Sequence record: LR756500.1
DNA length: 41,940 bases
Strand: one strand, 5' to 3'
The notes under the pieces are model-generated. The model saw only the letters and a program-made list of their open reading frames with translations, ran no database searches and was not told the DNA's origin. This document shows, piece by piece, positions 93 through 41,940 of the stretch. A program made the translations under genes and the position numbers. The stretch's first letter is position 1. Each line of letters opens with the position of its first letter.

Positions 93-1997
93 TTATTTAA
101 TTATATATCCCATTTTATCCCATTCAAATTTATAGTTACCTGTTCCAAAACATCTATAATATCCTTTATCATGCATTATCTCCACTTCAGTCATCGATGG
201 ATCCGCTCCTTCTTTAACCAATATATCTTTTCTAAATTTAAATCTATTCTCTCTTATGCCATCTACTACCCACCAATAATTCAAACCAGTATGCCCTAAA
301 TAGTTAAAACCTAATTTTGTATATAAATTATCTTGCTCATTTGGACNNNNNNNNNNNNNNNNNNNNNNNNNTAGCCGTTCAGGTTTATACTCTTTTATAA
401 AGTGTTTGAATAATCTAGAAGCTCCACCTACAACTGTTGTATTTAATTTATTAGCAAATCTAGTTAATTCATAATCTCCTTCAATAGCCTTCTGTCCTAA
501 ATTCTTTCTCAATGATCCAAAGGTCATTAATAATACTAACTCATCATTGTAATATAAACCTAATTTAACAGCTGCATTTGCATTACCTTGCAAATGATTC
601 ATATTTAAAAACTCTCTACTATCACTAGAGGACGCCTTTTTAACTATACACTTTCTAGCATATATTTTATTCGGAGATAAATTTAATAAATTTAAAATTC
701 TAGATTTTACTATCTCTTGCTTATTCAACCATAAATCTTCCCATATATGCACTAACTTAACTCCCCTTTCTTTAGCTAATACTGTCTTATCTAAATGATA
801 ATCTTTAGGTTTATTAAATTCATTATGCCAATATACTCCATTATGTTCAAACCCTATTTTATAATCTTCAATATAAACATCTATCTCATTACCATTTAAA
901 ATTGTTCTATCTTTTTTTGTTTCTATATTTAAACTCTCTATAAACTCTTTAATCTCTTCTTCACTCTTACTTGTATAATTAACACTTGAATAAAGAGGAT
1001 TACATATTGTACATAATTCATTATTAAATTTATATCTTTGATGCAACAGATGTATATTTATATTTTTATAATCTTTGCATTCACTACAATAAAAATCTAA
1101 TGTTCCATTTTCATATACCTCTTTAATATTTAAACNNNNNNNNNNNNNNNNNNNNNNNNNNNNNNNNNNNNNNNNNNNNNNNNNNNNNNNNNNNNNNNNN
1201 NNNNNNNNNNNNNNNNNNNNNNNNNNNNNNNNNNNNNNNNNNNNNNNNNNNNNNNNNNNNNNNNNNNNNNNNNNNNNNNNNNNNNNNNNNNNNNNNNNNN
1301 NNNNNNNNNNNNNNNNNNNNNNNNNNNNNNNNNNNNNNNNNNNNNNNNNNNNNNNNNNNNNNNNNNNNNNNNNNNNNNNNNNNNNNNNNNNNNNNNNNNN
1401 NNNNNNNNNNNNNNNNNNNNNNNNNNNNNNNNNNNNNNNNNNNNNNNNNNNNNNNNNNNNNNNNNNNNNNNNNNNNNNNNNNNNNNNNNNNNNNNNNNNN
1501 NNNNNNNNNNNNNNNNNNNNNNNNNNNNNNNNNNNNNNNNNNNNNNNNNNNNNNNNNNNNNNNNNNNNNNNNNNNNNNNNNNNNNNNNNNNNNNNNNNNN
1601 NNNNNNNNNNNNNNNNNNNNNNNNNNNNGACTCCATATTTTTTAATACATGTTTCTTTCTTTTTTATTTCTATTTGTTTTCTTAATTCTGAATCATTAGT
1701 AGCACATTTAGTAGAACAATAATTACTATAGCCTTTATCTATTCCGGAAAAATTACATTTATTTATTTTACATACTCTACATATAGGTATATCTAAAGTA
1801 TTATTTAAAAAATGCCATATTTTTTGCATAAATACTAAATTATAATCTTTAGTATAATCTACTATTTTTAAATACAGATCTAAATATCTTTTTTTTACAC
1901 TTACTTCTTTTATGTAAGGACCTTTTAAATTCAATAATATATCTTTATAATCTTTCATATAAATAAAATGGTTCATATAATTAATTATATGAACCAT
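93..1997 (-). CDS. Hef-like putative homing endonuclease, copy 1 (Zn/KYG-repeat N-terminus + Vsr/DUF559-like nuclease + Mom-like GNAT domain)
   Basis: CxxC..YCSxxC, KKYGV, nuclease motif EIDVYIEDYKIGFEHNGVYWH, then IYARKC/NHLQG/YELTRF/LYTKLGF. True start may be ATG 1976 or 1958. N-runs 347-371 and 1136-1628. Confidence 0.8.
   Translation of the reverse strand: MVHIINYMNHFIYMKDYKDILLNLKGPYIKEVSVKKRYLDLYLKIVDYTKDYNLVFMQKIWHFLNNTLDIPICRVCKINKCNFSGIDKGYSNYCSTKCATNDSELRKQIEIKKKETCIKKYGVXXXXXXXXXXXXXXXXXXXXXXXXXXXXXXXXXXXXXXXXXXXXXXXXXXXXXXXXXXXXXXXXXXXXXXXXXXXXXXXXXXXXXXXXXXXXXXXXXXXXXXXXXXXXXXXXXXXXXXXXXXXXXXXXXXXXXXXXXXXXXXXXXXXXXXXXXXXXXXXXXXXXXLNIKEVYENGTLDFYCSECKDYKNINIHLLHQRYKFNNELCTICNPLYSSVNYTSKSEEEIKEFIESLNIETKKDRTILNGNEIDVYIEDYKIGFEHNGVYWHNEFNKPKDYHLDKTVLAKERGVKLVHIWEDLWLNKQEIVKSRILNLLNLSPNKIYARKCIVKKASSSDSREFLNMNHLQGNANAAVKLGLYYNDELVLLMTFGSLRKNLGQKAIEGDYELTRFANKLNTTVVGGASRLFKHFIKEYKPERLXXXXXXXXXPNEQDNLYTKLGFNYLGHTGLNYWWVVDGIRENRFKFRKDILVKEGADPSMTEVEIMHDKGYYRCFGTGNYKFEWDKMGYIIK
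101..109 (-). promoter_or_regulatory. Late-promoter-like motif GATATATAA
   Basis: Same motif recurs 5-35 nt upstream of many starts. Confidence 0.55.
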
Positions 1998-1999
1998 TT
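1966..1999. repeat. Perfect 34-bp palindrome AAATGGTTCATATAATTAATTATATGAACCATTT
   Basis: Base-by-base self-complementary about 1982/1983; contains two candidate start codons of Hef-like copy 1. Confidence 0.95.
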
Positions 2000-2026
2000 A
2001 TTAAATGTTTATGTTATTTTAAACCA

Positions 2027-2578
2027 TTAAGTTAACTCTTCTGTCCAGTGATCACATCTAAAATTCATTGTAAGTTCCTGTGGGTCACTTGATTCATAAT
2101 CTAAAGAATCCATAGCTTCTGGATTTCCAGTAGGAAAAACGTCTTCAAATGTTATTTTTCTGAAAATATCACCTTTTCTATTATACATAACTACAATCAT
2201 AGTACCTACATATTCAACTTTTAGTCCCATTTCACCAGTTAATGGGTTATAGATAAGAGCATACCAATCTCTTAATTGTTTATAAAGGTATAATTCATTA
2301 GAAGTGTTAACGTTTAATGTAAATACAATACTAAGACTTACTGCTGTTTCACTTGGCATTCCTGCAAAACTTCTATCAGCAAACTTATATTTTTGTCCTA
2401 CTGAATCTACAGCTGGATTAACGCCTTGCAAACCTCCAATACTTTTAACATGCTCTAAAATTAAAGCAGAATCATGATTTAAAGGAGTCATTAAAGTTAC
2501 CTCAAATAAATTAGGATATACTGGTTCATACATATCCCTTGATGCTTTTGATTGATTATAATGTGGAAATGGACACAT
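2027..2578 (-). CDS. Tail tube protein (T4 gp19-like)
   Basis: 183 aa, FRKITFEDVFPT..LDYES..ELTMNFRCDHW typical of myophage tube C-terminus; downstream of the sheath gene. Confidence 0.85.
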   Translation of the reverse strand: MCPFPHYNQSKASRDMYEPVYPNLFEVTLMTPLNHDSALILEHVKSIGGLQGVNPAVDSVGQKYKFADRSFAGMPSETAVSLSIVFTLNVNTSNELYLYKQLRDWYALIYNPLTGEMGLKVEYVGTMIVVMYNRKGDIFRKITFEDVFPTGNPEAMDSLDYESSDPQELTMNFRCDHWTEELT

Positions 2579-2673: not shown

Positions 2674-4314
2674 TTAGCTTTTTTTCCATTCAAATTTATA
2701 ATTTCCTGTTCCAAAACATCTATAACATCCTCTATCATGCATTATTTCCACTTCAGTCATCGAGGGATCTGCTCCTTCTTTAACCAATTTATCCTTTCTG
2801 AACTTAAACCTATTTTCTCGAATTCCATCTACCACCCACCAATAATTAAGTCCTGTATGCCCTATATATTTAAACCTTAATTTAGTATATAAATTATCTT
2901 GCTCATCAACCNNNNNNNNNNNNNNNNNNNNNNNNNNNNNNNNNNNNNNNNNNNNNNNNNNNNNNNNNNNNNNNNNNNNNNNNNNNNNNNNNNNNNNNNN
3001 NNNNNNNNNNNNNNNNNNNNNNNNNNNNNNNNNNNNNNNNNNNNNNNNNNNNNNNNNNNNNNNNNNNNNNNNNNNNNNNNNNNNNNNNNNNNNNNNNNNN
3101 NNNNNNNNNNNNNNNNNNNNNNNNNNNNNNNNNNNNNNNNNNNNNNNNNNNNNNNNNNNNNNNNNNNNNNNNNNNNNNNNNNNNNNNNNNNNNNNNNNNN
3201 NNNNNNNNNNNNNNNNNNNNNNNNNNNNNNNNNNNNNNNNNNNNNNNNNNNNNNNNNNNNNNNNNNNNNNNNNNNNNNNNNNNNNNNNNNNNNNNNNNNN
3301 NNNNNNNNNNNNNNNCACCAACTTAACTCCCTTTTCTTTAGCTAATGCTGTCTTATCTAAATGATAATCTTTAGGTTTATTGAATTCATTGTGCCAATAT
3401 ACTCCATTATGCTCAAAACCTAAATTATATAAAGGTATAAATATATCTATTTCATCTCCATTTAAAATAGTTCTATCTATTTTTGTTTCTATATTTAAAC
3501 TTTCTATAAATTCTCTAATTTCATTTTCTTTACCACTAGATCTATAACTATTTAATGGATTACAATTAAGACAAGGATTAATTGAATATACATTAATTCT
3601 TTGATGAAGTAAAAAAGAATTGATATTATAATTTTTATTACATTTATTACAAATAATATCTATAGTTCTATTTTTATTTATTTTAATTATATTTAAATGA
3701 TTATATTTGTTTTTAATATATGTTTCATATTTCTCAAATAATGTTTCTTTTCTTTTATCAGTTATTATTTTGTTTTGTTGTGGATGATTAACTCCATATA
3801 TTTTATTCCAAGTTTCTTTTCTATTTTTTAAAAAATCTTCAGTTTTAAATATACTATCTTTACCATATCGTTTAATATATGTTTCTTTTATTTTATTTTG
3901 AATTTTTTCATTTGATATAAAATTTTCACCATATTTTTCTTTTAATGTTTCTTTTCTTTTATTAATAAAATATTCACTTTGAAATAAATTTTCTGTTCCA
4001 TATTTTTCTTTTATTTTTTTATATCTATTATCTTTTACTAATTGATCATTTGCTGCACATTTTTTTGAACAATATCCAGTATAATTAAATTTATTTGGAT
4101 TAAATTTAGATTCTACTGAATTACATATTTTACAATTTGGAATTTTTAAAGTATTATTTAAAAAATGCCAAAGTTTACGAGAAAAATTAATATTTAATAA
4201 TTTCGTATATAAAATAATTTCTTGATATATTTCAGAAAAATTAATTTTTATTTTATATTCTGTTCTTTCTTTTCTAGAAAGTTTTAATATTTCTTTATTC
4301 ATTTTTCCATTCAA
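2674..4314 (-). CDS. Hef-like putative homing endonuclease, copy 2
   Basis: Same architecture: LWHFLNN..CKIC..YCSKKC, KYG repeats, FEHNGVYWH, C-terminus near-identical to copies 1, 4, 5. Likely start MNKE overlapping the stop of copy 3. N-run 2912-3315. Confidence 0.8.
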   Translation of the reverse strand: MNGKMNKEILKLSRKERTEYKIKINFSEIYQEIILYTKLLNINFSRKLWHFLNNTLKIPNCKICNSVESKFNPNKFNYTGYCSKKCAANDQLVKDNRYKKIKEKYGTENLFQSEYFINKRKETLKEKYGENFISNEKIQNKIKETYIKRYGKDSIFKTEDFLKNRKETWNKIYGVNHPQQNKIITDKRKETLFEKYETYIKNKYNHLNIIKINKNRTIDIICNKCNKNYNINSFLLHQRINVYSINPCLNCNPLNSYRSSGKENEIREFIESLNIETKIDRTILNGDEIDIFIPLYNLGFEHNGVYWHNEFNKPKDYHLDKTALAKEKGVKLVXXXXXXXXXXXXXXXXXXXXXXXXXXXXXXXXXXXXXXXXXXXXXXXXXXXXXXXXXXXXXXXXXXXXXXXXXXXXXXXXXXXXXXXXXXXXXXXXXXXXXXXXXXXXXXXXXXXXXXXXXXXXXXXXXXXXXXXVDEQDNLYTKLRFKYIGHTGLNYWWVVDGIRENRFKFRKDKLVKEGADPSMTEVEIMHDRGCYRCFGTGNYKFEWKKS

Positions 4315-6001
4315 ATTTTAATGAACCACTATCATATATTCTATAAATTTTTCTAGACATCATTATTTCATGTTCTGTCATATTAGAATCATAACCTTCT
4401 TTAACTAATACATCTTTCCTATAATTAAATCTATGTTTTTTAATTCCATCTACTACATACCAATAATTTGGAGGTGTATTATTTATAAAATTGAATCCTA
4501 ATTTATAATAAAGATTTCCTTTACTCCAACTCCTATCAGCATAACTAATTATTCTTATTGGATTATATTCTTTAATAAAATGTTTAAATAAGCGATCAGC
4601 ACCACCAATAACATTAGTATTTAAAATTGTACAGAATCTAAGTAATTCATACTCATTTTCAATTGAAATTTGTCCTAGTGCTTTTCTTAATACACTAAAT
4701 GTCATTAAACTAACTAATTCATTATTATAATATAGCCCATATTTTATTTTAGATGGAGTATATCCTTGTATGTGATTTTTTTCTAAGAAATCTTTTTCTT
4801 CTTTTGTATTAATTTCTTTTATATCACATTTTCTAGCATATATTTTATTATCAGATAAATTTAATATATTTTTTATTCTAGATTTAATTATATCTTTTTT
4901 ATAATACCAATCATCTTCATATATATGTATTAATTTTATATTATTATTTTCAGCTAATTCTGTTTTTTCTAAATGATAATCTTTATCCTTTTGGAGTTCA
5001 TTATGCCAATAAATTCCATTAAATTCAAATCCTATTTTTAAATCAGGTAAATATATATCTATTTCTTTACCATTTAAAAATATTCTTCTATTTAATTCTA
5101 ATGTATTATCATATATTTCACTTATAAATAATTTTAAACTATTTTCAGGTTTTGATAAATTTAATTGATTACAATTTGTGCATGTTTCCTCTTTATTATA
5201 TCTATATCTAAATAAATCTCTACTTATTTTATATGATTTTTTACAATTGTTGCACATAATAGTGAAAAAATCTCTTTCAATAAGAAGTATTTGTTTATCT
5301 GGATATGTTTTTATTATATTTTCTTTTCTTGTTTGTAGTATTTTATATTTAATATTTTCAACTTTATTTGGATTATCTTCTCCATATAGTTCTATCATTG
5401 TATTTTTAAATACATCTTTAACTATTTCCGATTGCCATGGATGATTAGTTCCATAACGTTCTTGGGATGTTTTTTTATATGACTCTTTCCAACTATCTAT
5501 ATTTTCTTTGAATGATTCTATTCTTTTTTCTTGTATCTCCTTTAATTGGGCTACATTTTCTACACCATAACGTTCTAAATTAGTATTCTTTAACTTATTT
5601 TGAATATCTTGTTTTTCTTCTTCGGATTTATTTAATTTAGTATTACTTAATTTATCTTTTATATTCTGTAATTTATTTGGATTATCAACTCCATAACGGT
5701 TTAGACTAGTTTTACGTCTAGATTCTTTCATTTTTTCCTTTAACTCTGGATCATTAACCATACATTCTTTTGAACAGTATCCTGTATATCCAATATCTAA
5801 ATTTTTAAAATTAGAATCTTTATTATTACATACTTTACACTTGGGAACTTCTTTTATTTTATATATGTAGTGCCATATTTTTTGTAAAAAACTGATATCT
5901 AAATCTAAATAACCATTTATCAATTCATACTTAATTGGATAATTTTTCTTTACACTGCGTTCTTGTAATAAATTTCCTTTTAATTCTATAATATTTTCCA
6001 T
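4295..6001 (-). CDS. Hef-like putative homing endonuclease, copy 3 (most divergent, fully visible)
   Basis: RYG repeats, EIDIYLPDLKIGFEFNGIYWH, NHIQG, YELLRFC, ISYADRSWSKGNLYYKLGF. Confidence 0.85.
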   Translation of the reverse strand: MENIIELKGNLLQERSVKKNYPIKYELINGYLDLDISFLQKIWHYIYKIKEVPKCKVCNNKDSNFKNLDIGYTGYCSKECMVNDPELKEKMKESRRKTSLNRYGVDNPNKLQNIKDKLSNTKLNKSEEEKQDIQNKLKNTNLERYGVENVAQLKEIQEKRIESFKENIDSWKESYKKTSQERYGTNHPWQSEIVKDVFKNTMIELYGEDNPNKVENIKYKILQTRKENIIKTYPDKQILLIERDFFTIMCNNCKKSYKISRDLFRYRYNKEETCTNCNQLNLSKPENSLKLFISEIYDNTLELNRRIFLNGKEIDIYLPDLKIGFEFNGIYWHNELQKDKDYHLEKTELAENNNIKLIHIYEDDWYYKKDIIKSRIKNILNLSDNKIYARKCDIKEINTKEEKDFLEKNHIQGYTPSKIKYGLYYNNELVSLMTFSVLRKALGQISIENEYELLRFCTILNTNVIGGADRLFKHFIKEYNPIRIISYADRSWSKGNLYYKLGFNFINNTPPNYWYVVDGIKKHRFNYRKDVLVKEGYDSNMTEHEIMMSRKIYRIYDSGSLKFEWKNE

Positions 6002-6128: not shown

Positions 6129-6145
6129 AAGTTATTAGTTATCTA

Positions 6146-9100
6146 TTAGATAAACTCTCCAGTTGAAATAGCACCAGTCTTAAGAACAGTTGTTCTGTGA
6201 ACAAGAATTTCCAATCCCTTTACTGGTTCAACATATGTATCTAGTATACCTATATTTTTGTCTATTACATCAGGAGTATTATTTGTTTCATCCATAATGT
6301 TTCTAAAATCGTATACACCGTTATCTGCTTGAATTTGTCTCATAAAGTTATCAGCAAGTGTTTTAATTTCTAATCTAGTTTGTGCAGTATTAAATTCAAA
6401 AATAAAGTTTTTAAGAATTGCTGCAATACCATCTTGAATATAAATTAATACTTCTCTTACATGAATACTAGAAAGAGCAGACTTGATATTTTGTTGAGCT
6501 GTTTTATTACCAAAGATTACAATACCTGTACCGCTTTGGAAAATAATTGGGTTAAGTCCGAAAGGTTCAATCCAATCTCTATCTTCTTTAGATAAATTAT
6601 ATTCTAATCCAACTAAACCTCTTCCACCTACTACACCTCTTCTAGGACCTGCAACAATTGCCCAAGGTACTGAAGATGTATATTTTTCTACGAAGTTATT
6701 TGACACATAACCAGCAGGAGGAATAGCTAAATTTTTACCTCTATCTCTTACTAATACATAAGGAATATAAAAACCTGCATAATTTGATCCTTGTTCAACA
6801 CCTGGAAGAGTATATACTACTTTAGGATTTTTAGTTAAATCTCCACCTTCAGAAATCATTTTGGTATCAAGTAAACCTTGAGCATCTAAGAATGAAGGAT
6901 CTGTAGATTCTTTAAAATCTTTTATTGCTGGTGCATTAAGAATTGCAAATGCATTTTGTCTAGTTTTAGCTAAGTTACAAAGAACTGCTTTAGAACCTGA
7001 TTCAATACCTAATCCAAATGAATCAACAATATATCTAAAAGTTATATTATCTTTATCTATAAGAGCTTTATATAATTTTGTTCCAGATATAGTATCGTAT
7101 AAGATATTATTTTGTTGTTCCATAGAACCATCTGGTAAATGATAGCTAGTATAAGTAAATCCATTTAATGAAAATAAAGTATAATAATCAACCCAATCTC
7201 CAATTTTGCTATATACTTCAACTGAAGGAACAGCATTTACAGTTTTAAATAAAACTTTACCTACTGTTGTAACTGTTAATGTAGTAGCATTTTGTGAAAT
7301 TCTAACTATTCTAGTTAATCTAGAAGGACCTGTTGTACCACCATCATCGGCTACTATATATTTACCTACTGCTAATTTATTTGCATAATCAGAATGTACT
7401 TCAATAACATTACTTAATGATGTAGCAGTTGCAGGTATAGTTGAATTTAATGCTCCTTTTAAAGTTTGAATTACTAATGTATCTGTTGCAGCAGGAGTAT
7501 CAGTATTATCAAAAAATACTTCAGAGAAATTAAATGTTCCTTGAGTTACAAAACTTGAATCTTCGTATCCTTCAATTTTAGCAACTGGAATTAAATAATT
7601 TGTATCAGTAATAGCTCCACTTAAATATAAACCTCCATATACTATAGAATCAAATGTAGTTATAGTACTATCAATATATAATACTTCTGCAGCTTGTGGA
7701 TCTCCACTACCGTCTGCATCCCATATCATTTTATCTCCATCTGTAATTGTTCCTTGTTCAACGCTAGTATACATATCATTTGAATATGCTGCTATAATTG
7801 AATCAGCAGGTGCTGCAACTAAATCATCAACTAAAAAGTCAATATCTGTATAATTAACATATTTAAGATCATTTCCTGATAGAGCAGTATCAAATGATGT
7901 TTCAGTAATTCCTCCTACTACACTTACTTCAATTAATGCAGTTGTTGCAGTTACCTGTTTAGTAATAACTGGTACAAATTCTCCACTATCTGCTTGTAAA
8001 TAAGAACCTAATATTCTAGGAGATAATTCATTTTCTCTAAATTCTTCTTGTGCAACAATATTATAAAATGTTGCATTAGTTGAACTATCAACACTTATTA
8101 AAAGATTTCCAGATGATGCTAATACTGGATTTAATCCTGTACAATCATTTATAGCTTTTAATGTTACTGATTTCTTAGCATAATCTAAATTAGCTTTAAT
8201 TGTTTCTTTATAAGAAAGAAAATCTATTGTTGTAGGTTGTTCCCATTCTAAATTATGTCCAATTAAATCTAATCCACCATCTACTCCTGAAAGTAATTCA
8301 CCACTATCATATGCTTCTTTATTAATAGAACAAAATAATCCTGTTTTAGAAGTTTCTGTATTAATAATTGTTTCAATGAATAGATTATTACTATTTAAAT
8401 CAATAAAATCTGGAATTAAACATCCTGTATAAGTTGCAATATGATTTACTTCTGGTAAATTTAAGAATGCTTCAAGAGATGTATCAGTCGAATCTGCTAC
8501 TGATACTTTTCTTTTTATACCTCTAGATTTATCAAAATAACTAGCAAATAAAGGATCTGATGCTAATCTTTCATATGGAGTTGTATCAGTTGATTTAGGA
8601 CCAAAATCTCCTTCAATAACTATTACATCAATCATAAAATCTGATATATAATCATCTTTGTGTAAAAACTCAGGTATATTAGATATACCATACCATTCTT
8701 TAACAGTAATATCAAAACCACTTATAAAATCTGCTCTTTTAACAATTACAGTTAAAGGCTTTTTATCGATATTTGTTAAATTAAATAATTTATTTCCAGA
8801 TGAAGTAACATTTTTAATAAATGCTTCTGTATCAGGAAACCAAAATTTATCTCTATTGAAAAATCCTGCAAATAAATCTGATGATTTTGTATCATTAATT
8901 TGTGTTGCACTAGTTGAAAATACAACATCTTCAATTTTATCAGCATTTCCTTCTGAATCGTCATTATTTAATCTTAATAAATTAAGAGCTAAAATTGGAC
9001 CTCTTTCTAAAGCAGCTAAACATGTTCTGTGAAAATAAGAACCTTTTCTTTCTAAAGTTCTATCTATACTTCCATATACATCGCTAAAAAAGCCAGTATC

Positions 9101-9256
9101 TGATACATAAATAGGCGTATTGAAAGGGCCTTTCTTACTAAATCCAACGATCATTCTAATTTGCTCAGCAGGTATAGAAACTGTTTGAGATTTATCAAAC
9201 TCAAATCTATAGGTGCCGGAACTACGAAGCGATGCAATTTGTGGTGATATTGCCAT
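6146..9256 (-). CDS. Tail sheath protein (T4 gp18-like), 1036 aa
   Basis: N-terminal GTYRFEFDKS..IVGFSKKGPFNTP; C-terminal AGPRRG, GNKTAQ..SALSSIHVREVL, FIFEFN..TR, DETNNTPDVID. Confidence 0.95.
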   Translation of the reverse strand: MAISPQIASLRSSGTYRFEFDKSQTVSIPAEQIRMIVGFSKKGPFNTPIYVSDTGFFSDVYGSIDRTLERKGSYFHRTCLAALERGPILALNLLRLNNDDSEGNADKIEDVVFSTSATQINDTKSSDLFAGFFNRDKFWFPDTEAFIKNVTSSGNKLFNLTNIDKKPLTVIVKRADFISGFDITVKEWYGISNIPEFLHKDDYISDFMIDVIVIEGDFGPKSTDTTPYERLASDPLFASYFDKSRGIKRKVSVADSTDTSLEAFLNLPEVNHIATYTGCLIPDFIDLNSNNLFIETIINTETSKTGLFCSINKEAYDSGELLSGVDGGLDLIGHNLEWEQPTTIDFLSYKETIKANLDYAKKSVTLKAINDCTGLNPVLASSGNLLISVDSSTNATFYNIVAQEEFRENELSPRILGSYLQADSGEFVPVITKQVTATTALIEVSVVGGITETSFDTALSGNDLKYVNYTDIDFLVDDLVAAPADSIIAAYSNDMYTSVEQGTITDGDKMIWDADGSGDPQAAEVLYIDSTITTFDSIVYGGLYLSGAITDTNYLIPVAKIEGYEDSSFVTQGTFNFSEVFFDNTDTPAATDTLVIQTLKGALNSTIPATATSLSNVIEVHSDYANKLAVGKYIVADDGGTTGPSRLTRIVRISQNATTLTVTTVGKVLFKTVNAVPSVEVYSKIGDWVDYYTLFSLNGFTYTSYHLPDGSMEQQNNILYDTISGTKLYKALIDKDNITFRYIVDSFGLGIESGSKAVLCNLAKTRQNAFAILNAPAIKDFKESTDPSFLDAQGLLDTKMISEGGDLTKNPKVVYTLPGVEQGSNYAGFYIPYVLVRDRGKNLAIPPAGYVSNNFVEKYTSSVPWAIVAGPRRGVVGGRGLVGLEYNLSKEDRDWIEPFGLNPIIFQSGTGIVIFGNKTAQQNIKSALSSIHVREVLIYIQDGIAAILKNFIFEFNTAQTRLEIKTLADNFMRQIQADNGVYDFRNIMDETNNTPDVIDKNIGILDTYVEPVKGLEILVHRTTVLKTGAISTGEFI

Positions 9257-9330: not shown

Positions 9331-11178
9331 TTAATTTGTATTAATGTAATTAAATTTTAAATTACCTGTTCCAAAACATCTATAATATCCTTTATCATGC
9401 ATTATCTCCACTTCAGTCATTGATGGATCCGCTCCTTCTTTAACCAATTTATCCTTTCTGAACTTAAACCTATTTTCTCTTATGCCATCTACTACCCACC
9501 AATAACTAAGCTCTGAATGCCCTATATATTTAAAACCTAATTTTATATACAAATTATCTTGCTCATTTGATGTCCAATCACAATCAGTATAACTAATTAC
9601 TTGTTCTGGTTTGTATTCCTTTGTAAAATAATTAAACAAACGACTTGCACCTCCTGTAACAGATATATTCAATTTATTAGCAAACCTTAAAAGTTCATAT
9701 TCTCCTTCAACTGCCTTTTGTCCTAAATTCTTTCTTAATGATCCTAACGTCATTAATGATACTAATTCATTNNNNNNNNNNNNNNNNNNNNNAACAGCAG
9801 CATTAACATTACCTTGCAAATGGTTCCTATTTAAAAACTCTCGACTATCACTAGAGGACACCTCTTTAATTATACACTTTCTAGCATATATAGTTTCATT
9901 TAAATTTAATAGCCCTTTTATTCTTGACTTAATAATATCTTTTTTATAATTCCAATCATCTTCCCAAATATGCACCAACTTAACTCCTTTAGATTTAGCT
10001 AATAATGTTTTATTTAAATGATATTTATCATCTTTATATAATTCGGAATGCCAATAGACACCATCTACTTCAAATCCTACTTTATAATCTTCTATATAAA
10101 TATCTATTTCATTATCATTTAAAATGGTTCGATCTTTTTTTGTTTCTATATTTAAACTTTCTATAAATTCTCTAATTTCATTTTCTATTTTACTTTCAAA
10201 AGAATTTGAATAATATAAAGGTTCACAATTTAAACATGTATTTTTATTTATTAATGATCTTTTATGAAGTAAATAGCTTGTTATAGTATATTCTTTATTA
10301 CATTTATCGCATGTTATAGTAACATTTAAATTATTATCAATATTAATAATATTTAGAGTATTAAATTTATTTAAAATATCATTTTTATATTTATTTTTTA
10401 ATTTTGATTTATAAAAATTAGATTGAGTTATAAATTCAGTTNNNNNNNNNNNNNNNNNNNNNNCTTTTGATTTTTCTTTTATTTGTTCTGATTGTAATAC
10501 ATGATTAGTACCATATTTTTCTAAGCATGTTAATTCTCTTTTTTCTAAACTTTCTTTTGTTACATTATGAAACTGATTATATCTTTTAAAATTAGTTTCT
10601 TTTATTTTTTGTTTAATTTCATTATTTCTAAATACATTATCACTTCCATATTTTTCAGTTAAAGTTTTTATAGATTTTTGTTTAATTTTTATATTATCAA
10701 AAACATATTCAACTCCATAANNNNNNNNNNNNNNNNNNNNNNNNNNNNNNCTTATCTTTTTAACAGATAATATTTCTTCATTACCATATTTTTCTAAACA
10801 TGTTGATTTTCTTTTTTCTATTGCTAATTTACTTTGACTTGGATTTATTGTTCCATATCTTTCTAATGAAGTTTTTCTAATTTTATTTATAGATAATTGT
10901 TTTGAACATTCATTTGAACATGATGTATAACCAATAGAAATAGATCTAAATTTTTTTAAATTATTTTTACATATTTCACATATAGGTATTTCACATATAT
11001 CATTTAAATATAAATAAAGAATTTCTTTAAATTGTATTTTAGTAAAATTATATTTTGTAATAAAAATATTTAAATCATTTAAAATTTCTGGTTCAAATTT
11101 TTCGAACCATTTTTTATTCATTCTAGTTGATAAAAAACGATTATTTATTTTTATTATATGCAGTAATTTATTTTTCAT
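9331..11178 (-). CDS. Hef-like putative homing endonuclease, copy 4
   Basis: CEICK..CSNEC, multiple KYG repeats, FEVDGVYWH, NHLQG, YELLRFA, ISYTD..LYIKLGF. Confidence 0.85.
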   Translation of the reverse strand: MKNKLLHIIKINNRFLSTRMNKKWFEKFEPEILNDLNIFITKYNFTKIQFKEILYLYLNDICEIPICEICKNNLKKFRSISIGYTSCSNECSKQLSINKIRKTSLERYGTINPSQSKLAIEKRKSTCLEKYGNEEILSVKKIXXXXXXXXXXXYGVEYVFDNIKIKQKSIKTLTEKYGSDNVFRNNEIKQKIKETNFKRYNQFHNVTKESLEKRELTCLEKYGTNHVLQSEQIKEKSKXXXXXXXXTEFITQSNFYKSKLKNKYKNDILNKFNTLNIINIDNNLNVTITCDKCNKEYTITSYLLHKRSLINKNTCLNCEPLYYSNSFESKIENEIREFIESLNIETKKDRTILNDNEIDIYIEDYKVGFEVDGVYWHSELYKDDKYHLNKTLLAKSKGVKLVHIWEDDWNYKKDIIKSRIKGLLNLNETIYARKCIIKEVSSSDSREFLNRNHLQGNVNAAVXXXXXXXNELVSLMTLGSLRKNLGQKAVEGEYELLRFANKLNISVTGGASRLFNYFTKEYKPEQVISYTDCDWTSNEQDNLYIKLGFKYIGHSELSYWWVVDGIRENRFKFRKDKLVKEGADPSMTEVEIMHDKGYYRCFGTGNLKFNYINTN

Positions 11179-11271: not shown

Positions 11272-12084
11272 TTAAATTTTAAAATATTTATCTTTTATTT
11301 TAAATGATAAATTATATTCATGCATAAAGTTTTCTTCACCTATATTTTTTATAGTATCTTCTTTCCATTTTTCATTTCTTTGTGGATGATCATACCAATA
11401 AACTTTTTTAACTTTAAATATTTCAGAATCTTGTACAAATTTATAAAATAAATCAAAATGAATATCTGAAGACATAATAATTATTCTAGAATTATTAATT
11501 GAAGCATATAATGGTACTATTTCTTTTATTAAAATTTTTTTATTATTATCAGACATGTTAGAAATATTATCAATTATAAAAATATCATAAAGTTTACCTT
11601 TATAATTATTACTATTTACTAATTGTATACTTGAATTATTATCGAATTCTATTACTTCTGATGTGCTTTTTATAATACCTGGTTTCAAATACATAGGTAA
11701 TTTAGAATAAAAAATTTTAAATTTATTAAATAATTCTCTACCAATTTCATGTTTAATTGAAAATAAAGCTATTTTTTTTTGTTCAAATACTGCAAAATAT
11801 AAAGATAATAATGTATTTAACATTGAAATTCCCATTTGTCTAGAACTTAATAATATTGAAAATCTATTTTCATTCCAAAATTTTAAAATATCTTTTTGAT
11901 ATTCATATAAATTAATATCCAATTTTGATATAAAATATTCAATATCTTTTCTACATTTATAATATTCATCTAATTCATCATAATCTAAAACATATTTAAA
12001 TTTACTATTTTTACTATTAGGTATATTTCTATAACAATATTCATTGCTATTTATACTATTTTTATTTATATAATTCATAACCAT
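11272..12084 (-). CDS. Terminase large-subunit ATPase-domain paralogue with degenerate motifs
   Basis: YKCRKDIEYF, LYEYQ (Q motif), SRQMGIS (Walker A without Lys), FIIDNIS (Walker B DE>DN), YSKLPMYLKPG, VYWYDHPQR; no nuclease domain. Confidence 0.8.
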   Translation of the reverse strand: MVMNYINKNSINSNEYCYRNIPNSKNSKFKYVLDYDELDEYYKCRKDIEYFISKLDINLYEYQKDILKFWNENRFSILLSSRQMGISMLNTLLSLYFAVFEQKKIALFSIKHEIGRELFNKFKIFYSKLPMYLKPGIIKSTSEVIEFDNNSSIQLVNSNNYKGKLYDIFIIDNISNMSDNNKKILIKEIVPLYASINNSRIIIMSSDIHFDLFYKFVQDSEIFKVKKVYWYDHPQRNEKWKEDTIKNIGEENFMHEYNLSFKIKDKYFKI

Positions 12085-12175: not shown

Positions 12176-14062
12176 TTAAATAATATCATAAATATCGAAA
12201 AATAAACTACCATCTTCTCCTTTAGATCCCTTATTTAATTCTTTATCAACTAAATCTTGAATATCTTTTTCTATTATTTCATATAATTCTTCTGCAAAAT
12301 CTGAGAAATCCATAGTAGAAAAGAATTCATTACTGGTTATGCAAGACATTATTAAATCATCGTGTCCCTTCATTCCAGCATAGGATCCAGCTGGAGTTTT
12401 TCCAAATTGTTTAGCTTCTTCTATTGTATTAAATTCAAATAATTGTATTCTATTTTCTCTAATTGATTTTTTAAATTTTTGACATATTATAGGTTTATTA
12501 TCAGTTTTAATTCTTAATCCAAAACTAGGAGTCTTTGCGTCATTTCTATGTTTAAATTTTACTATCATTTCTTCATCAAATTCATTTCTAGATGGAAAAA
12601 TAGTTTGTAAATTTTTAATTAATTCACCACCAAAAGTATTCCATTCTATTATTATTTTTATATTTTCTGCATAAAAAATATCAAAAATTAAAGTATATAA
12701 TATTTTAGCATATTGTTCAGGAGAATGTTCATTACTTCTAAATACTCCTATTTGTTTTAAAGCAAAAAAGTCCATAAAAGAGCCAGGCTGTTTTAGATGT
12801 TTAAACATATCTTTATCTAATAATTCTAGTTTAAAGATATTTATTACAGCATGATCTCCAAAATTACCAGCAGATAAATCACAACTAAATAACCAATAAT
12901 TTTCTTCATTACCTATTTCATCAATATCAAATTTTGGATGCCATTTCAAAAATATTTCATAAGGTATTTCTAAATCTTCTAATTCATCAAATTGATGTGA
13001 TATAAATTCTACTTTTGCATTTTCTAATTTTTTAAGTTCTCCTGGACCTAAAAGTAAATTATCTCCTGATATAAATTGATTACCATATTGTCTATTAAAT
13101 GCATCTTCACCACCTAAATTAGAAATTTCTTTTCTCATCCATTCATTATCTCTTCCTGGAACCTCCCACCAATCAACTCTAAAATCTTTAAATTCATTTT
13201 GTTTTCTAACAGCTCCATCATAAATATCATGAAACTTATTAAATCCATTTGGTGTACTAGTAATAATAATTCTAGATATTTGTGAAGACGATAATGTAGG
13301 AAATACATTTTCATAAAAACTATGTACAAAATTAGGATGTATGTGAGCAAACTCATCTAAAAATAAAAGGTGAATAGTAAAACCTATACCTGCTTTTTTA
13401 GTAGTAGATTGAGCAACAATCCTACAGCCATTATCAAATTTTAAATTAAATACATCATTTTTTAATAATCCTGGTTTCATAAAAAATGGTAAATTATCTA
13501 ATATAACTTTTGCTTTATCTACAATTTCTCTCGTCGTGGCACCTTTATTCGATAAAATTAAACAATTCTTATCAAAATTAAATAATACGTACCATGCTAT
13601 ATAAATTGACGAACATATTGTTTGACTTGAAAGTATACCATTAGTATATAATCTATGATTTGGATGATTTACTGTAACATCAAACATACCTATTTTATTG
13701 TTACTTTTTGATATACTAATAATTTTTTCTAAACCATCGACTGTTATTATTTCCGTATTTAATTCAAGTTTATCGAAAGATATTTTATTATAATTTTTAT
13801 CATAAACTTTATGTAAATCAGCGCCTTCTAAAATTTTACCTGACTCTGTTATTATTGTCCATACTTTATAAGGTTGAGTATTATGAAGATATTGTAATTC
13901 TTCATATCCAGTATCAGTTAAAACTTGTATATATGATAACTTAATAGATTTAATTATTTTTTTAGATATATTATTTTCATCTAAATCTAAATTTCTATAC
14001 TGTATTTTTTCTATTAATTCTATTAAGTATAAAATTATTTTTTTTAATATTTTTTTTATCAT
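12176..14062 (-). CDS. terL: Terminase large subunit, C-terminal part, preceded by split-intein IntC (aa 1-147)
   Basis: Intein blocks EGADLH, MFDVTV..HRLYTNGILSSQ|T, then TICSSIYIAW, Walker B LFLDEFAH, STPNG, nuclease motifs CDLSAG..GD and HDDLIM. Confidence 0.92.
   Translation of the reverse strand: MIKKILKKIILYLIELIEKIQYRNLDLDENNISKKIIKSIKLSYIQVLTDTGYEELQYLHNTQPYKVWTIITESGKILEGADLHKVYDKNYNKISFDKLELNTEIITVDGLEKIISISKSNNKIGMFDVTVNHPNHRLYTNGILSSQTICSSIYIAWYVLFNFDKNCLILSNKGATTREIVDKAKVILDNLPFFMKPGLLKNDVFNLKFDNGCRIVAQSTTKKAGIGFTIHLLFLDEFAHIHPNFVHSFYENVFPTLSSSQISRIIITSTPNGFNKFHDIYDGAVRKQNEFKDFRVDWWEVPGRDNEWMRKEISNLGGEDAFNRQYGNQFISGDNLLLGPGELKKLENAKVEFISHQFDELEDLEIPYEIFLKWHPKFDIDEIGNEENYWLFSCDLSAGNFGDHAVINIFKLELLDKDMFKHLKQPGSFMDFFALKQIGVFRSNEHSPEQYAKILYTLIFDIFYAENIKIIIEWNTFGGELIKNLQTIFPSRNEFDEEMIVKFKHRNDAKTPSFGLRIKTDNKPIICQKFKKSIRENRIQLFEFNTIEEAKQFGKTPAGSYAGMKGHDDLIMSCITSNEFFSTMDFSDFAEELYEIIEKDIQDLVDKELNKGSKGEDGSLFFDIYDII
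13622..14062 (-). mobile_element. Split intein C-fragment (147 aa, atypically long, ends Ser-Gln; +1 Thr)
   Basis: Block B-, F- and G-like motifs; junction codons TCA AGT CAA|ACA. Confidence 0.8.
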
Positions 14063-15162: not shown

Positions 15163-15166
15163 TTTT

Positions 15167-15178
15167 TATTTATATATT
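15167..15178 (-). promoter_or_regulatory. AATATATAAATA, endonuclease/TerL-C
   Basis: Directly upstream of ATG 15162. Confidence 0.7.
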
Positions 15179-15188
15179 AGATATAGTA

Positions 15189-15764
15189 CTAGCTTCTTGA
15201 TAGATAAGAATATGTTTTATATAAATAATATTTAATTTTATCTAAAAAAGATAATGTTTTATTTGTTTTAGATATAACATAATATAATTCAAATATAGGA
15301 AGTGTATAAGTATTATCTTTATTTTTAAATTTACTTAAACTATTAATTAAAGTAATATCATTTAACTTTATAGTAATTAATATATTATGGAAAAAACATT
15401 TCCCCGTTTGTCTCGCCGCGAGGCAGATACTGAAGCGATTATCAACAAAATGTCTAAGCATTTTTTCTTGATAATCTCTTAATACAATTGTTCTAAGACC
15501 TTCATCGGTCATTACTGTACAATACTTATTAGCAAAATATACTATATCTTTAGCACATTTTCTTATTTCACTTATTTCAAAATCTGTATAATCAAATATT
15601 ATGTTACCTTTTCTTATTGTTGGATTGCCTTCATAAAAGGGAGTTGATTTGGGTTTATAACCTTCATCAATCATATTCATTAATTCATTGATTTTTTCGG
15701 TACTCCATGCTGTTCTTTCTTGCACATTATCTTCTTTATGTGCTAGCGCGTATTCTTCTTCCAT
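15189..15764 (-). CDS. terL: Terminase large subunit, N-terminal part (aa 1-122) + split-intein IntN (aa 123-191)
   Basis: KCAKDIVYFANKYC, LRDYQ, Walker A AARQTGK directly followed by Cys1 (CFFHNILI..LPIFELY). Confidence 0.92.
   Translation of the reverse strand: MEEEYALAHKEDNVQERTAWSTEKINELMNMIDEGYKPKSTPFYEGNPTIRKGNIIFDYTDFEISEIRKCAKDIVYFANKYCTVMTDEGLRTIVLRDYQEKMLRHFVDNRFSICLAARQTGKCFFHNILITIKLNDITLINSLSKFKNKDNTYTLPIFELYYVISKTNKTLSFLDKIKYYLYKTYSYLSRS
15192..15398 (-). mobile_element. Split intein N-fragment of terL (69 aa)
   Basis: Cys after GK; block A-like; no block B, which is in the other half. Confidence 0.75.
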
Positions 15765-28155: not shown

Positions 28156-28164
28156 TAATATTTT

Positions 28165-28176
28165 TATTTATATATC
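28165..28176 (-). promoter_or_regulatory. GATATATAAATA, TnsA-like endonuclease
   Basis: Upstream of ATG 28155. Confidence 0.7.
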
Positions 28177-28194
28177 CCATTATATTTTTAAATG

Positions 28195-39652: not shown

Positions 39653-39668
39653 TTATATAAAAAAATAA

Positions 39669-40886: not shown

Positions 40887-41053
40887 ATGTACTATATATT
40901 AGAATTGAAATCTCTCTATAATAATATTTGCTGTATTAATTATTTTAAATTTAGTATGCTTAGTTATATCTAGACACTTCTATTACAACTATAAATTATT
41001 TAAATATATTCCTATTTAAAATAATTGCGTATACTATGATTCACGATTTAAAC

Positions 41054-41085
41054 AAAAAAGACTCTTAGAAATAAGAGTCTTTTTT
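41054..41085. terminator. Bidirectional terminator-like hairpin between tnpB and Hef-like copy 5
   Basis: AAAAAAGACTCTTA-gaaa-TAAGAGTCTTTTTT, 14-bp stem incl. A/T tails. Confidence 0.85.
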
Positions 41086-41940
41086 CCATTCAAATTTATA
41101 ATTTCCTGTTCCAAAACATCTGTAATATCCCCTATCATGCATTATCTCCACTTCAGTCATTGATGGATCCGCTCCTTCCTTAACTAATTTATCTTTTCTA
41201 AATTTAAACCTATTCTCCCTAATTCCATCTACTACCCACCAATAATTTATATCAGTATGTCCTAAGTATTTAAAACCTAATTTAGTATATAAATTATCTT
41301 GCTCATTTGGTGTCCAATCACAATCAGCATAACTAATTACTCTATTAGGTTTATATTCATCTAAAAAGTATTTAAACAAACGACTTGCACCTCCTATTAC
41401 ACTAATATTCAATTTATTAGCAAACCTTAAAAGTTCAAATTCTCCTTCAATTGCCTTTTGACCTAAATTCTTTCTAAGAGATCCAAATGTCATCAAAGAT
41501 ACCAACTCATCATTATAATACAAACCTAATTTAACAGCTGCATTTGCATTACCTTGCAAATGATTCATATTTAAAAACTCTCTACTATTACTAGAATTAA
41601 CGGTTTTAATTACACACTTACGTGCATACATAGTTTCATTTAAATTTAATAATCCCTTTATTCTAGATTTTACTATCTCTTGCTTATTTAACCATAAATC
41701 TTCCCATATATGCACTAACTTAACTCCCTTTTCTTTAGCTAATTTAGTTTTATTTAAATGATAATCTTTAGGTTTATTAAATTCATTGTGCCAATAAACT
41801 CCATTATGCTCAAAACCTAAATTATATAAAGGTATATAAATATCTATCTCATCACCATTTAAAACATTTCTATCTTTCTTTGTTTCTATATTTAAACTTT
41901 CTATAAACTCTTTAATCTCATTTTCAGATTTACTTGTATA
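41065..41940 (-). CDS. Hef-like putative homing endonuclease, copy 5 (partial, runs off right edge)
   Basis: Frame is open to 41940: YTSKSENEIKEF..EIDIYIPLYNLGFEHNGVYWH.., then Mom-like domain as in the ORF track. Confidence 0.88.
   Translation of the reverse strand, partial: YTSKSENEIKEFIESLNIETKKDRNVLNGDEIDIYIPLYNLGFEHNGVYWHNEFNKPKDYHLNKTKLAKEKGVKLVHIWEDLWLNKQEIVKSRIKGLLNLNETMYARKCVIKTVNSSNSREFLNMNHLQGNANAAVKLGLYYNDELVSLMTFGSLRKNLGQKAIEGEFELLRFANKLNISVIGGASRLFKYFLDEYKPNRVISYADCDWTPNEQDNLYTKLGFKYLGHTDINYWWVVDGIRENRFKFRKDKLVKEGADPSMTEVEIMHDRGYYRCFGTGNYKFEWKKDSYF

What the first reader, a model, noticed from the sequence alone, without database searches (positions are those of the whole stretch)
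93..41940. Five nuclease + Mom-like GNAT fusion genes: possible single-gene restriction/modification or self-protecting homing elements
Seen: each copy has a Vsr/DUF559-like nuclease motif (EID..FE[H/F/V][N/D]G.YWH) followed by a domain with FL..NH[I/L]QG, GLYY..ELV..MTF, YEL.RF, ISY[A/T]D, LY.KLGF. Known: phage Mu Mom (GNAT fold, adenine modifier) has the collinear pattern KHYS, LGVF..DLVG, YMELNRM, QSFAD, VYQASNF; the His and Asp I recall as metal ligands are retained here. These proteins are usually labelled only Hef-like endonucleases. Inference: one polypeptide may both cut competitor DNA and modify its own target, or the GNAT fold may read modified bases. Five copies in 42 kb suggests active spread.
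Basis: partly seen in the sequence, partly recalled or inferred. Interest (0 to 1): 0.82.

Follow-up and report, generated by a model that had tools for sequence, protein, structure and literature searches.

The report
Hef-type homing nucleases with Mom-like domain
The five genes are diverged copies of a known, very widespread phage family of free-standing homing endonucleases (Hef type), whose cutting domain is always fused to a domain related to the phage Mu DNA modifier Mom. The fusion is real and already published, but what the Mom-like domain does has never been tested.

Summary
Five minus-strand ORFs carry a Vsr/EDxHD-like nuclease followed by a GNAT domain of the Mom family. One copy is intact, three are partly masked by N, and one is cut by the window end.

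Support for the Mom assignment:
- PHROG Mom-like family, E 2e-10.
- Pfam PF25680 (Mom) on close homologues.
- An AlphaFold model (pLDDT 96.7) whose best Foldseek match is the Mom crystal structure 8bv8.

The window lies in a 462-kb uncultured huge phage (LR756500.1) with about ten such genes. They belong to the family of U5 Hef, a reported homing endonuclease with the same architecture.

Evidence for mobility: 78 of 79 related phages have the sheath and tube genes adjacent, whereas this phage has two Hef-like genes between them.

The copies are old paralogues (dS 0.35 to 1.6), not a recent burst.

The fusion and a restriction/modification reading were already published (Iyer et al. 2021).

New here: the GNAT pocket is nearly invariant across 150 distant relatives. 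However, Mom's essential Ser124 is replaced by a canonical Gly-Gly-Ala loop, and Arg151 is not conserved.

Whether the domain marks DNA is unresolved. My estimate for target marking that gives self-immunity is about 0.3.

The parts
93..1997 (-). c1: Hef-like ORF, 634 codons. It starts 30 nt downstream of the tail tube gene. N runs at 347-371 and 1136-1628.
   Evidence: Nuclease motifs at 873-887 and 825-851. NHLQG at 585-599, GGA at 420-428. The frame is kept across both N runs.
2674..4314 (-). c2: Hef-like ORF, 546 codons, directly upstream of the tail tube gene. The N run 2912-3315 hides the end of the nuclease domain and most of the Mom-like domain.
   Evidence: EID at 3439-3453, FEHNGVYWH at 3391-3417. 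Only the last ~78 residues of the Mom-like domain are readable (LYTKLRF at 2872-2892).
4295..6001 (-). c3: the only fully readable Hef-like ORF (568 aa, P0001), directly downstream of the tail sheath gene.
   Evidence: phrog_3339 full length, E 6.5e-133.
5267..6001 (-). c3 N-terminal half: CxxC...CxxC zinc finger (5762-5839) plus repeats of the K-x-T-x-x-x-(R/K)-Y-G-(V/T) type (Pfam DUF7487). This is the presumed target-recognition array.
   Evidence: This half is only 32-40% identical between copies. It tracks the insertion site: L070 matches c3 at 160 bits and the other copies at 43-72 bits.
5171..5254 (-). c3 second CxxC...CxxC zinc ribbon, ahead of the nuclease.
   Evidence: Present in c1-c4.
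4862..5149 (-). c3 Vsr/EDxHD-like nuclease domain (residues 285-380).
   Evidence: The profile hits 3r3p (I-Bth0305I) at E 8.7e-4. The D of E-I-D aligns with Asp196 (Vsr Asp51), the N of F-E-F-N-G with Asn208 (Vsr His64), and the H of Y-W-H with His213 (Vsr His69).
4298..4849 (-). c3 Mom-family GNAT domain (residues 385-568). Pocket residues: His410, Gln412, Glu452, Arg455, Gly466-Gly467-Ala468, Asp489, Tyr498. It also has a basic helical insertion between the last two strands.
9331..11178 (-). c4: Hef-like ORF, 615 codons, directly upstream of the tail sheath gene. N runs at 9772-9792, 10442-10463 and 10721-10750.
   Evidence: It has FEVDGVYWH (Asp rather than Asn) and SYTD.
41065..41940 (-). 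c5: Hef-like ORF with its 5' part outside the window. The nuclease and Mom-like domains are complete and unmasked.
6146..9256 (-). Tail sheath gene: a conserved gene flanked by c4 (upstream) and c3 (downstream).
2027..2578 (-). Tail tube gene: a conserved gene flanked by c2 (upstream) and c1 (downstream). In 78 of 79 relatives it lies 40-50 bp after the sheath gene.

Best explanation
The five genes are free-standing homing endonuclease genes of the Hef family, inserted between conserved genes of a huge phage.

Each protein is modular:
- A zinc finger and a variable array of DUF7487 repeats, inferred to read a long, copy-specific DNA target.
- A zinc ribbon.
- A Vsr/EDxHD-type nuclease that cuts (shown by homology).
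- A Mom-family GNAT domain, packed rigidly against the nuclease. It is a constant part of the cutting module of the whole family, including U5 Hef.

The genes persist and move as selfish elements. Presence/absence at a syntenic site is shown here; cleavage and homing are inferred from U5 Hef.

For the GNAT domain I commit to the following as the single most likely role, at about 0.3 to 0.4. It is a working acyl-transfer pocket that engages a flipped base of the same target through its basic insertion. It marks that base in the phage's own DNA, so that a free-standing element, which does not destroy its own target on insertion, is immune to itself. The donor is more likely an acyl-CoA than glycyl-tRNA, because the domain has the canonical GNAT phosphate-binding loop that Mom lacks.

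The confidence value below applies to the identification as Hef-type mobile endonuclease genes with an integral Mom-family domain. It does not apply to the marking step.
For: Family and architecture:
- phrog_3339 full length.
- 417 phage records carry the nuclease+GNAT module, many annotated Hef-like.
- U5 Hef itself covers 99% of the module at 36.7% identity (H71) and is reported to cleave nrdB (PMC2988022).
- The nuclease matches I-Bth0305I, and Taylor 2011 places Hef-type proteins in that family.

GNAT/Mom:
-.
- Model pLDDT 96.7 and pTM 0.91 for the two domains together.
- 8bv8 is the top Foldseek match, E 2.9e-7 over 196 columns.

Mobility:
- 78 of 79 relatives have sheath and tube adjacent, with no Hef-like gene within 9 kb.
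- L070 has a clean 2.49-kb insert in the same spacer.
- The N-terminal array of the L070 gene matches c3 specifically.

Constraint on the GNAT domain:
- dN/dS is 0.07-0.43 in the Mom-like domain.
- Pocket conservation over 153 aligned sequences (150 cluster representatives plus c3 and U5 Hef): His 100%, Gln 99%, Glu 98%, Arg 99%, Tyr 100%, first Gly 99%.

Argument for self-immunity:
- The EDxHD-like nuclease inside the split terminase gene of this same window (14062..15162) ends right after the nuclease and has no GNAT domain.
- I-Bth0305I, which is intron-encoded, also has none.
Against: - No cleavage, homing or modification was measured for these genes.
- Mom's essential Ser124 has no counterpart.
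- Arg151 is Cys/Asp in c4/c5 and is Arg in only 43% of representatives.
- The Asp149 position is Asn or Ser in about 12%, including U5 Hef and L070.
- The profile-profile match to Mom is modest (probability 61%, E 8e-5).
- By structure alone the core is as close to CoA-dependent N-acetyltransferases as to Mom.
- Other free-standing homing endonuclease families manage without a modification domain (general knowledge).
- The homodimer prediction gave no answer.
Confidence: 0.8

Rival explanations
1. The GNAT domain is a non-catalytic DNA-handling module. Its pocket and basic insertion hold or flip a base next to the cut, or hold two subunits together. This gives the single-site Vsr-type nuclease its grip and specificity, and nothing is transferred.
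For: - Mom's Ser124 is missing, Arg151 is not conserved, and the Asp149 position is Asn in the only tested member, U5 Hef.
- The two domains are predicted as one rigid unit (pTM 0.91).
- Mom's own insertion is proposed to bind the DNA major groove with the adenine flipped out.
- The strongly conserved basic residues R-F-x-x-R-K lie in the insertion.
Against: - A purely structural GNAT remnant would not be expected to keep the Gly-Gly-Ala phosphate-binding loop (99/87/92%).
- Nor would it be expected to keep an almost invariant His, Gln, Glu, Arg, Tyr set over clusters below 50% identity.
- The dimer prediction gave no support either way.
Confidence: 0.3
2. It is a single-chain restriction/modification weapon, as proposed by Iyer et al. 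2021. The GNAT domain modifies adenines throughout the phage genome, and the nuclease degrades unmodified host DNA or the DNA of superinfecting phages.
For: - Published prediction for jumbo phages (PMC7824862).
- The architecture resembles single-chain type IIG/IIC enzymes (own knowledge).
- Multi-copy occurrence in PA5oct-like phages and others.
Against: - About ten paralogues, each with a different long N-terminal array.
- Insertion polymorphism between conserved genes.
- The N-terminal array tracks the insertion site.
- U5 Hef is reported to cleave a phage gene (nrdB) and is classed as a homing endonuclease.
- No PADLOC defence model matches.
Confidence: 0.1
3. The GNAT domain is an active acyltransferase with a non-DNA acceptor (itself, a host or phage protein, or a small molecule), or a sensor that couples cutting to acyl-CoA levels.
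For: - The structural core is closest by Z-score to protein N-terminal acetyltransferases such as RimI and Naa50 (Z 13.5, rmsd 2.3-2.6 A over 130 residues).
- The loop resembles canonical motif A.
Against: - Sequence profiles place it in the Mom family, not in protein acetyltransferase families.
- It shares with Mom a long helical insertion at the same place in the fold.
- It is fused to DNA-binding and DNA-cutting domains.
Confidence: 0.12

Closest known systems
Hef of phage U5 (Sandegren, Nord, Sjoberg 2005) and 'Hef-like' free-standing homing endonucleases of T4-like, ViI-like, Campylobacter and jumbo phages
   Same: - Same order of parts: zinc finger, K-Y-G-type repeats, Vsr-like nuclease, Mom-like domain.
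- 36.7% identity over 99% of the nuclease+GNAT module.
- Free-standing position next to conserved genes.
   Different: - The N-terminal arrays are unrelated in detail.
- U5 Hef has Gly-Asn where the window copies have Ala/Thr-Asp (the Mom Asp149 position).
- U5 Hef lacks about seven residues between helix 3 and the next strand.
I-Bth0305I and the EDxHD family (Taylor et al. 2011, PDB 3r3p; Dassa et al. 2009 fractured genes)
   Same: Homologous Vsr-like nuclease with the same catalytic positions.
   Different: - I-Bth0305I is intron-encoded.
- It uses NUMOD/HTH DNA-binding regions.
- Its nuclease is C-terminal, and it has no GNAT domain.
Mom of phage Mu (PDB 8bv8; Silva et al. 2026; Karambelkar et al. 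2020)
   Same: - GNAT fold with a helical insertion before the last strand.
- Same Pfam family (PF25680).
- Counterparts of His58, Glu108, Arg111, Asp149 and Tyr159 are kept.
   Different: - Mom is a stand-alone 241-aa protein.
- Ser124 (essential) is replaced by Gly-Gly-Ala.
- Tyr59 is Ile/Leu.
- Arg151 (essential) is not conserved.
- Sequence identity is about 14%.
Mom + REase-fold fusions of jumbo phages (Iyer, Anantharaman, Krishnan, Burroughs, Aravind 2021)
   Same: This is the same class of protein. That paper already describes the fusion and notes five copies in phage PA5oct. PA5oct relatives are among the matches here, with five places per genome (H47, H48).
   Different: That paper reads them as restriction/modification systems and does not connect them with Hef or homing. 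The evidence here favours mobile, site-specific elements.
Single-chain type IIG/IIC restriction-modification enzymes such as MmeI (own knowledge, not tested here)
   Same: One polypeptide with a nuclease, a modification domain and a shared target reader. This is the logic proposed for the marking hypothesis.
   Different: - Those enzymes use SAM-dependent methyltransferase domains and short targets.
- They are cellular defence genes, not mobile phage genes.

Membership tests
Hef-type / EDxHD (Vsr-like) homing endonucleases | Vsr-like nuclease domain with the family's catalytic positions (I-Bth0305I Asp196, Asn208, His213, conserved Glu) | tested here: met
   The A1 profile hits 3r3p at E 8.7e-4, with E-I-D, F-E-x-N/D-G and Y-W-H aligned to those positions. 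The motifs are present in all five copies.
Hef-type / EDxHD (Vsr-like) homing endonucleases | Full-length homology to the founding member, U5 Hef | tested here: met
   tblastn H71: 99% of the nuclease+GNAT module, 36.7% identity, E 2e-43. Same domain order. phrog_3339 full length.
Hef-type / EDxHD (Vsr-like) homing endonucleases | Free-standing gene between conserved genes, present in some genomes and absent from the same site in relatives | tested here: met
   78 of 79 relatives have sheath and tube 40-50 bp apart. One (L070) has a related gene there with clean insertion borders.
Hef-type / EDxHD (Vsr-like) homing endonucleases | Site-specific double-strand cleavage of the gene-less allele and biased inheritance (homing) | not testable with these tools
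   Needs cleavage assays and mixed infections. Only known for U5 Hef, from the literature.
Mom family (Pfam PF25680) of the GNAT superfamily | GNAT fold | tested here: met
   Model pLDDT 96.7. Foldseek gives 85 matches at E <= 0.001, and every one of the 50 listed is Mom or another GNAT acetyltransferase. VIA-align Z up to 13.5.
Mom family (Pfam PF25680) of the GNAT superfamily | Sequence-profile membership | tested here: met
   phrog_1384 (Mom-like), E 2e-10. PF25680 is precomputed on many close homologues. hhalign against a Mom alignment gives E 8e-5 but probability only 61%. NCBIfam is uninformative, because Mu Mom itself finds no model.
Mom family (Pfam PF25680) of the GNAT superfamily | Helical (HTH-like) insertion between the last two strands, essential in Mom | tested here: inconclusive
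   - The model has three short helices (residues 240-265 of the model) between the last strands.
- The Foldseek alignment to 8bv8 spans 196 columns, against about 130 aligned residues for ordinary GNATs.
- No residue-level superposition was available.
- hhalign stops before the insertion.
Mom family (Pfam PF25680) of the GNAT superfamily | Essential catalytic residues Arg111 and Ser124 (Silva 2026), plus Asp149 and Arg151 | tested here: not met
   - Arg111 is kept (99%).
- Asp149 is kept in c3, c4 and c5 and in 84% of the family.
- Ser124 falls in a gap or is replaced by Gly-Gly-Ala.
- The Arg151 position is Ser in c3, Asp in c4/c5, and Arg in 43% of the family.
Mom family (Pfam PF25680) of the GNAT superfamily | Gly-tRNA-dependent modification of N6 of adenine in double-stranded DNA | not testable with these tools
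   Biochemical assay needed.
Single-chain restriction-modification system | Genome-wide protective modification plus cleavage of unmodified foreign DNA at short sites | not testable with these tools
   The indirect evidence points the other way: many paralogues with long variable arrays, insertion polymorphism, and no PADLOC match.

The most novel reading that the evidence does not exclude
Hef-type homing endonucleases are 'cut-or-mark' enzymes. The fused Mom-family domain, guided by the same target-reading array as the nuclease, covalently acylates a base in the element's own target site. This makes the carrier genome immune while unmarked competitor genomes are cut. It would be the first homing endonuclease with built-in epigenetic self-immunity. 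It would also be a second chemistry of Mom-type DNA modification, probably acyl-CoA dependent and site-specific rather than genome-wide.
Probability: 0.3. Interest if true: 0.8.

Novelty: new member of a known kind. Interest (0 to 1): 0.45.

Why it matters
The family is very large: 19,180 cluster representatives at 50% identity match the C-terminal domain, and nearly all of the best 150 have the fused architecture. It occurs in many well-studied phages, including T4-like, ViI-like, Campylobacter, Klebsiella jumbo, Lak and PBS1 phages.

Two literatures describe it under different names, 'Hef-like homing endonuclease' and 'Mom-REase fusion', and draw different conclusions. In the papers I could search, nobody has tested the Mom-like domain.

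If the domain marks the target, it would explain how free-standing homing genes avoid cutting their own genome. It would also add a site-specific DNA acylation to the known phage DNA modifications. If it only grips DNA, it is an example of a GNAT fold turned into a DNA reader.

Either answer is within reach now that the Mom structure and mechanism are known.

Tried and rejected
- Homodimer prediction of the nuclease+GNAT module: no answer, so it is not evidence either way.
- Single-sequence search of the PDB with c3: nothing found. The profile was needed.
- Direct BLASTP of the C-terminal domain against Mu Mom: not significant (E 0.09). The relationship shows only with profiles and structure.
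- NCBIfam: no model, even for Mu Mom, so uninformative.
- PADLOC: no match.
- Apparent stand-alone Mom-like proteins of about 190-200 aa among the homologues: the one I checked on a long contig (P0116) is a mis-called piece of a 480-codon Hef-like frame. These are not evidence for a free domain.
- The window's own assembly is not held. The nearest record, G001, has no sheath or tube match at all. I used it only to count five further intact paralogues and their DNA identity, and read no sequence from it.
- Locus L004 (100% identical tube gene, probably the same genome) was fetched but deliberately not read or used, so that no masked letters were looked up.
- Sandegren 2005 and Iyer 2009 are not in the held library. 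Statements about U5 Hef's activity rest on reviews that cite it.
- I considered 'recent burst of duplication' and rejected it.
- I considered pseudogenes and rejected that. All readable parts are open, dN/dS is well below 1 in the shared module, and the five other copies have no internal stops.

Full report
**Where the window lies.** The window is 100% identical in protein to LR756500.1, an unannotated 462-kb 'uncultured phage' record. G+C is 17 to 30%, and almost all genes are on the minus strand. In transcription order, the region holds:
- c5, then a long tail-fibre-like gene, then replication and packaging genes.
- c4, then the tail sheath gene.
- c3, c2, then the tail tube gene, then c1.

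**The observation.**
- Five ORFs share one layout.
- The layout is a CxxC zinc finger, repeats of a K-x-T-x-x-x-(R/K)-Y-G type (Pfam DUF7487), a second CxxC...CxxC ribbon, a nuclease domain, and a C-terminal domain of about 190 residues.
- c3 (4295..6001) is the only copy without N. c5 is cut by the window end.
- In c2 nearly the whole C-terminal domain is masked, and in c1 the S-Y-A-D stretch is masked.
- N-run test: four of the six N runs in these ORFs are not multiples of three. Even so, every ORF stays open, with family-homologous sequence in one frame on both sides.
- The X counts equal the residue counts of the unmasked paralogues.
- The runs therefore behave as one-for-one masks. I did not try to read what is under them.

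**What the two domains are.**

Nuclease:
- A profile of 62 homologues finds the I-Bth0305I catalytic domain (3r3p) at E 8.7e-4.
- The D of E-I-D aligns with Asp196 (Vsr Asp51). The N/D of F-E-x-N/D-G aligns with Asn208 (Vsr His64). The H of Y-W-H aligns with His213 (Vsr His69).
- The Asn in F-E-F-N-G is therefore the normal state in this family, not a lost catalytic Asp.

C-terminal domain:
- It hits the PHROG family of Mom-like proteins at E 2e-10, while Mu Mom hits the same family at 8e-84.
- Many close homologues carry a precomputed Pfam PF25680 hit, and that family's name is Mom.
- A profile-profile comparison with 33 Mom-family proteins gives E 8e-5 over 126 columns, with probability 61%.
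- An AlphaFold2 model of nuclease plus C-terminal domain has pLDDT 96.7 and pTM 0.91. The two domains are thus predicted as one rigid unit.
- Foldseek ranks the Mom crystal structure 8bv8 first (E 2.9e-7, 196 columns), ahead of ordinary GNAT acetyltransferases.
- By structural Z-score alone, the core is equally close to CoA-dependent N-acetyltransferases such as RimI and Naa50 (Z about 13.5, rmsd 2.3 to 2.6 A over about 130 residues).
- The extra aligned length with Mom fits a shared helical insertion before the last strand, which the model shows. In Mom that insertion is essential and is proposed to bind DNA.

**Which known family.**
- c3 matches phrog_3339 'homing endonuclease' over its full length.
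- In the phage collection, 417 records carry the nuclease+GNAT module at 1,044 places. Many are annotated Hef-like, and a few 'nuclease/acetyltransferase'.
- The founding Hef of phage U5 covers 99% of the module at 36.7% identity and has the same domain order. It is reported to cleave nrdB.
- Taylor et al. placed the Hef type in the Vsr-like EDxHD family.
- Iyer et al. [quoted passage not shown] They proposed protection by momylation plus attack by the nuclease, and noted five copies in PA5oct. They do not mention homing.
- The family is very large. 19,180 cluster representatives match the C-terminal domain, 8,997 of them at E <= 1e-30. Among the best 149 new representatives, 139 are at least 400 aa long, with the domain at the very C-terminus.

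**Are they mobile?**
- I fetched 79 IMG/VR relatives by the tail tube protein (62 to 69% identity). I left out L004, which is probably this same genome.
- In 78 of them the sheath and tube genes are 40 to 50 bp apart, and no Hef-like gene lies within up to 9 kb.
- The window has two Hef-like genes (c3, c2) in that spacer, plus c4 and c1 on the outer sides.
- One relative, L070, has a 2.49-kb insert in the same spacer: a 631-aa Hef-like gene and a small ORF. Its flanks are contiguous in L071 and L067.
- The N-terminal array of the L070 gene resembles that of c3, the copy at the same position (44.6% identity, 160 bits). It resembles the other copies much less (43 to 72 bits). Its nuclease+GNAT module is equally distant from the readable copies c1, c3 and c4 (41 to 43%; c2 is mostly masked there).
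- The variable half therefore tracks the insertion site, as expected if it reads the target.

**Are they spreading now?**
- No. Between c1, c2, c4 and c5 the shared module is 77 to 89% identical in DNA. Against c3 it is 63 to 68%. The N-terminal halves are only 32 to 40% identical in protein.
- Synonymous divergence is 0.35 to 1.6. dN/dS is 0.07 to 0.43 in the Mom-like domain.
- In the nuclease domain dN/dS is 0.20 to 0.48 among c1, c2, c4 and c5, and 0.69 to 0.86 in comparisons with c3.
- The nearest held record has five more intact paralogues. That record appears to be the rest of this genome without the window region.
- The phage thus carries about ten old, specialised copies.

**Does the Mom-like domain look active?**
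- Essential or important Mom residues are Arg111, Ser124, Asp149 and Arg151, followed by His58, Tyr59, Tyr159, Trp48 and Trp181. Numbering in Karambelkar 2020 is ten lower.
- I aligned 153 sequences: c3, U5 Hef, 150 cluster representatives and one further matched stretch. The counterparts are His 100%, Glu108 98%, Arg111 99%, Tyr159 100%, and Asp149 84% (Asn 10%, Ser 3%). A family-specific Gln is 99%.
- Tyr59 is Ile or Leu.
- The Arg151 position is Arg in 43% and Ser in 36%. It is Ser in c3 and Asp in c4/c5.
- Ser124 has no counterpart. At the start of helix 3 the family has x-x-G-G-A (99, 87 and 92%). From general knowledge, this is the canonical GNAT motif-A loop that binds the pyrophosphate of CoA. 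Mom itself lacks this loop.
- U5 Hef and the L070 protein lack the Asp.
- The Asp/Asn/Ser alternation recalls motif IV of amino-methyltransferases, where these residues hold the target amino group. This is an analogy from my own knowledge, not a test.
- Overall, the pocket is conserved like a working ligand site but is not a copy of Mom's. An acyl-CoA donor looks at least as likely as glycyl-tRNA.

**An argument for self-immunity.**
- The window also holds an EDxHD-like nuclease gene (14062..15162) between the two halves of a split terminase gene.
- Its nuclease aligns with that of c3 (E 1e-4), and the protein ends there, with no GNAT domain.
- I-Bth0305I, which is intron-encoded, has none either.
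- Elements inside introns or inteins destroy their target on insertion; free-standing ones do not.
- A marking domain found only in the free-standing type would make sense. This is a pattern from a few cases and needs a proper survey.

**Verdict.**
- The finding is real and the domain calls are right.
- The genes are new members of a known, already described family.
- The most likely identity is free-standing Hef-type homing endonuclease genes (about 0.8 to 0.9).
- For the GNAT domain, my estimates are: target marking that gives self-immunity about 0.3, a non-catalytic DNA grip about 0.3, another acceptor or sensing about 0.12, and a genome-wide restriction/modification weapon about 0.1.
- The open question is experimentally tractable.

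Noticed in passing
window 12176-15764 (minus strand), plus 11272-12084: The terminase large subunit gene is split. The N-part (15189..15764) ends in an intein-N-like stretch after the Walker A motif. An endonuclease ORF (14062..15162) follows, with an EDxHD-like nuclease and no Mom-like domain. Then comes an ORF (12176..14062) that starts with an intein-C-like stretch and continues as terminase. This is the 'fractured gene' arrangement of Dassa et al. 2009. A further terminase-ATPase-like ORF lies at 11272..12084.
   Followed up: partly
window 26076-28821 (minus strand): The clamp loader gene is split in the same way. 28195..28821 matches phrog_168 positions 7-117, followed by a Hint-like start. 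26824..28155 is an endonuclease ORF (phrog_15427). 26076..26837 ends an intein-like stretch in H-N-C and matches phrog_168 positions 110-309.
   Followed up: partly
window 40017-40886 (plus strand): A TnpB / IS200-IS605-type transposase-like ORF (phrog_506, E 6e-35) lies next to c5. It is one of only two sizeable plus-strand genes. No guide RNA or element ends were sought.
   Followed up: no
window 15775-16686, 16698-17471, 18258-19733, 31335-32123 (minus strand): Four proteins begin with nearly the same 13 residues: [11 protein letters not shown](I/L)E, MKYIKSYENFIFE and MKFLETYENHIEE. These resemble the capsid-targeting leader of T4 internal proteins (own knowledge), so the proteins may be packaged in the head and trimmed by the prohead protease. 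One is a leucine-rich-repeat protein (partly masked). One has a long (GQ)n run and a metallopeptidase/VWA-like look, and sits beside a MoxR-like AAA ATPase (19740..21434).
   Followed up: no
L070 6479-8967 (IMG/VR relative): A clean 2.49-kb insertion in the sheath-tube spacer, holding a 631-aa Hef-like gene and a 137-aa ORF of unknown function. About 20 bp of the spacer in L071 align to both borders of the insert.
   Followed up: partly
window 4295-4314: The listed TTG start of c2 overlaps the end of c3 by 20 nt. An ATG four codons downstream (about 4300-4302) is an alternative start. The two Hef-like genes are packed head to tail with no spacer.
   Followed up: no
L002 3158-4600: A public gene call of 199 aa (P0116, labelled with a weak Mom hit) is the tail of a 480-codon open Hef-like frame. 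Many short 'Mom-only' entries in the protein collections are probably such mis-calls or contig-end fragments.
   Followed up: yes
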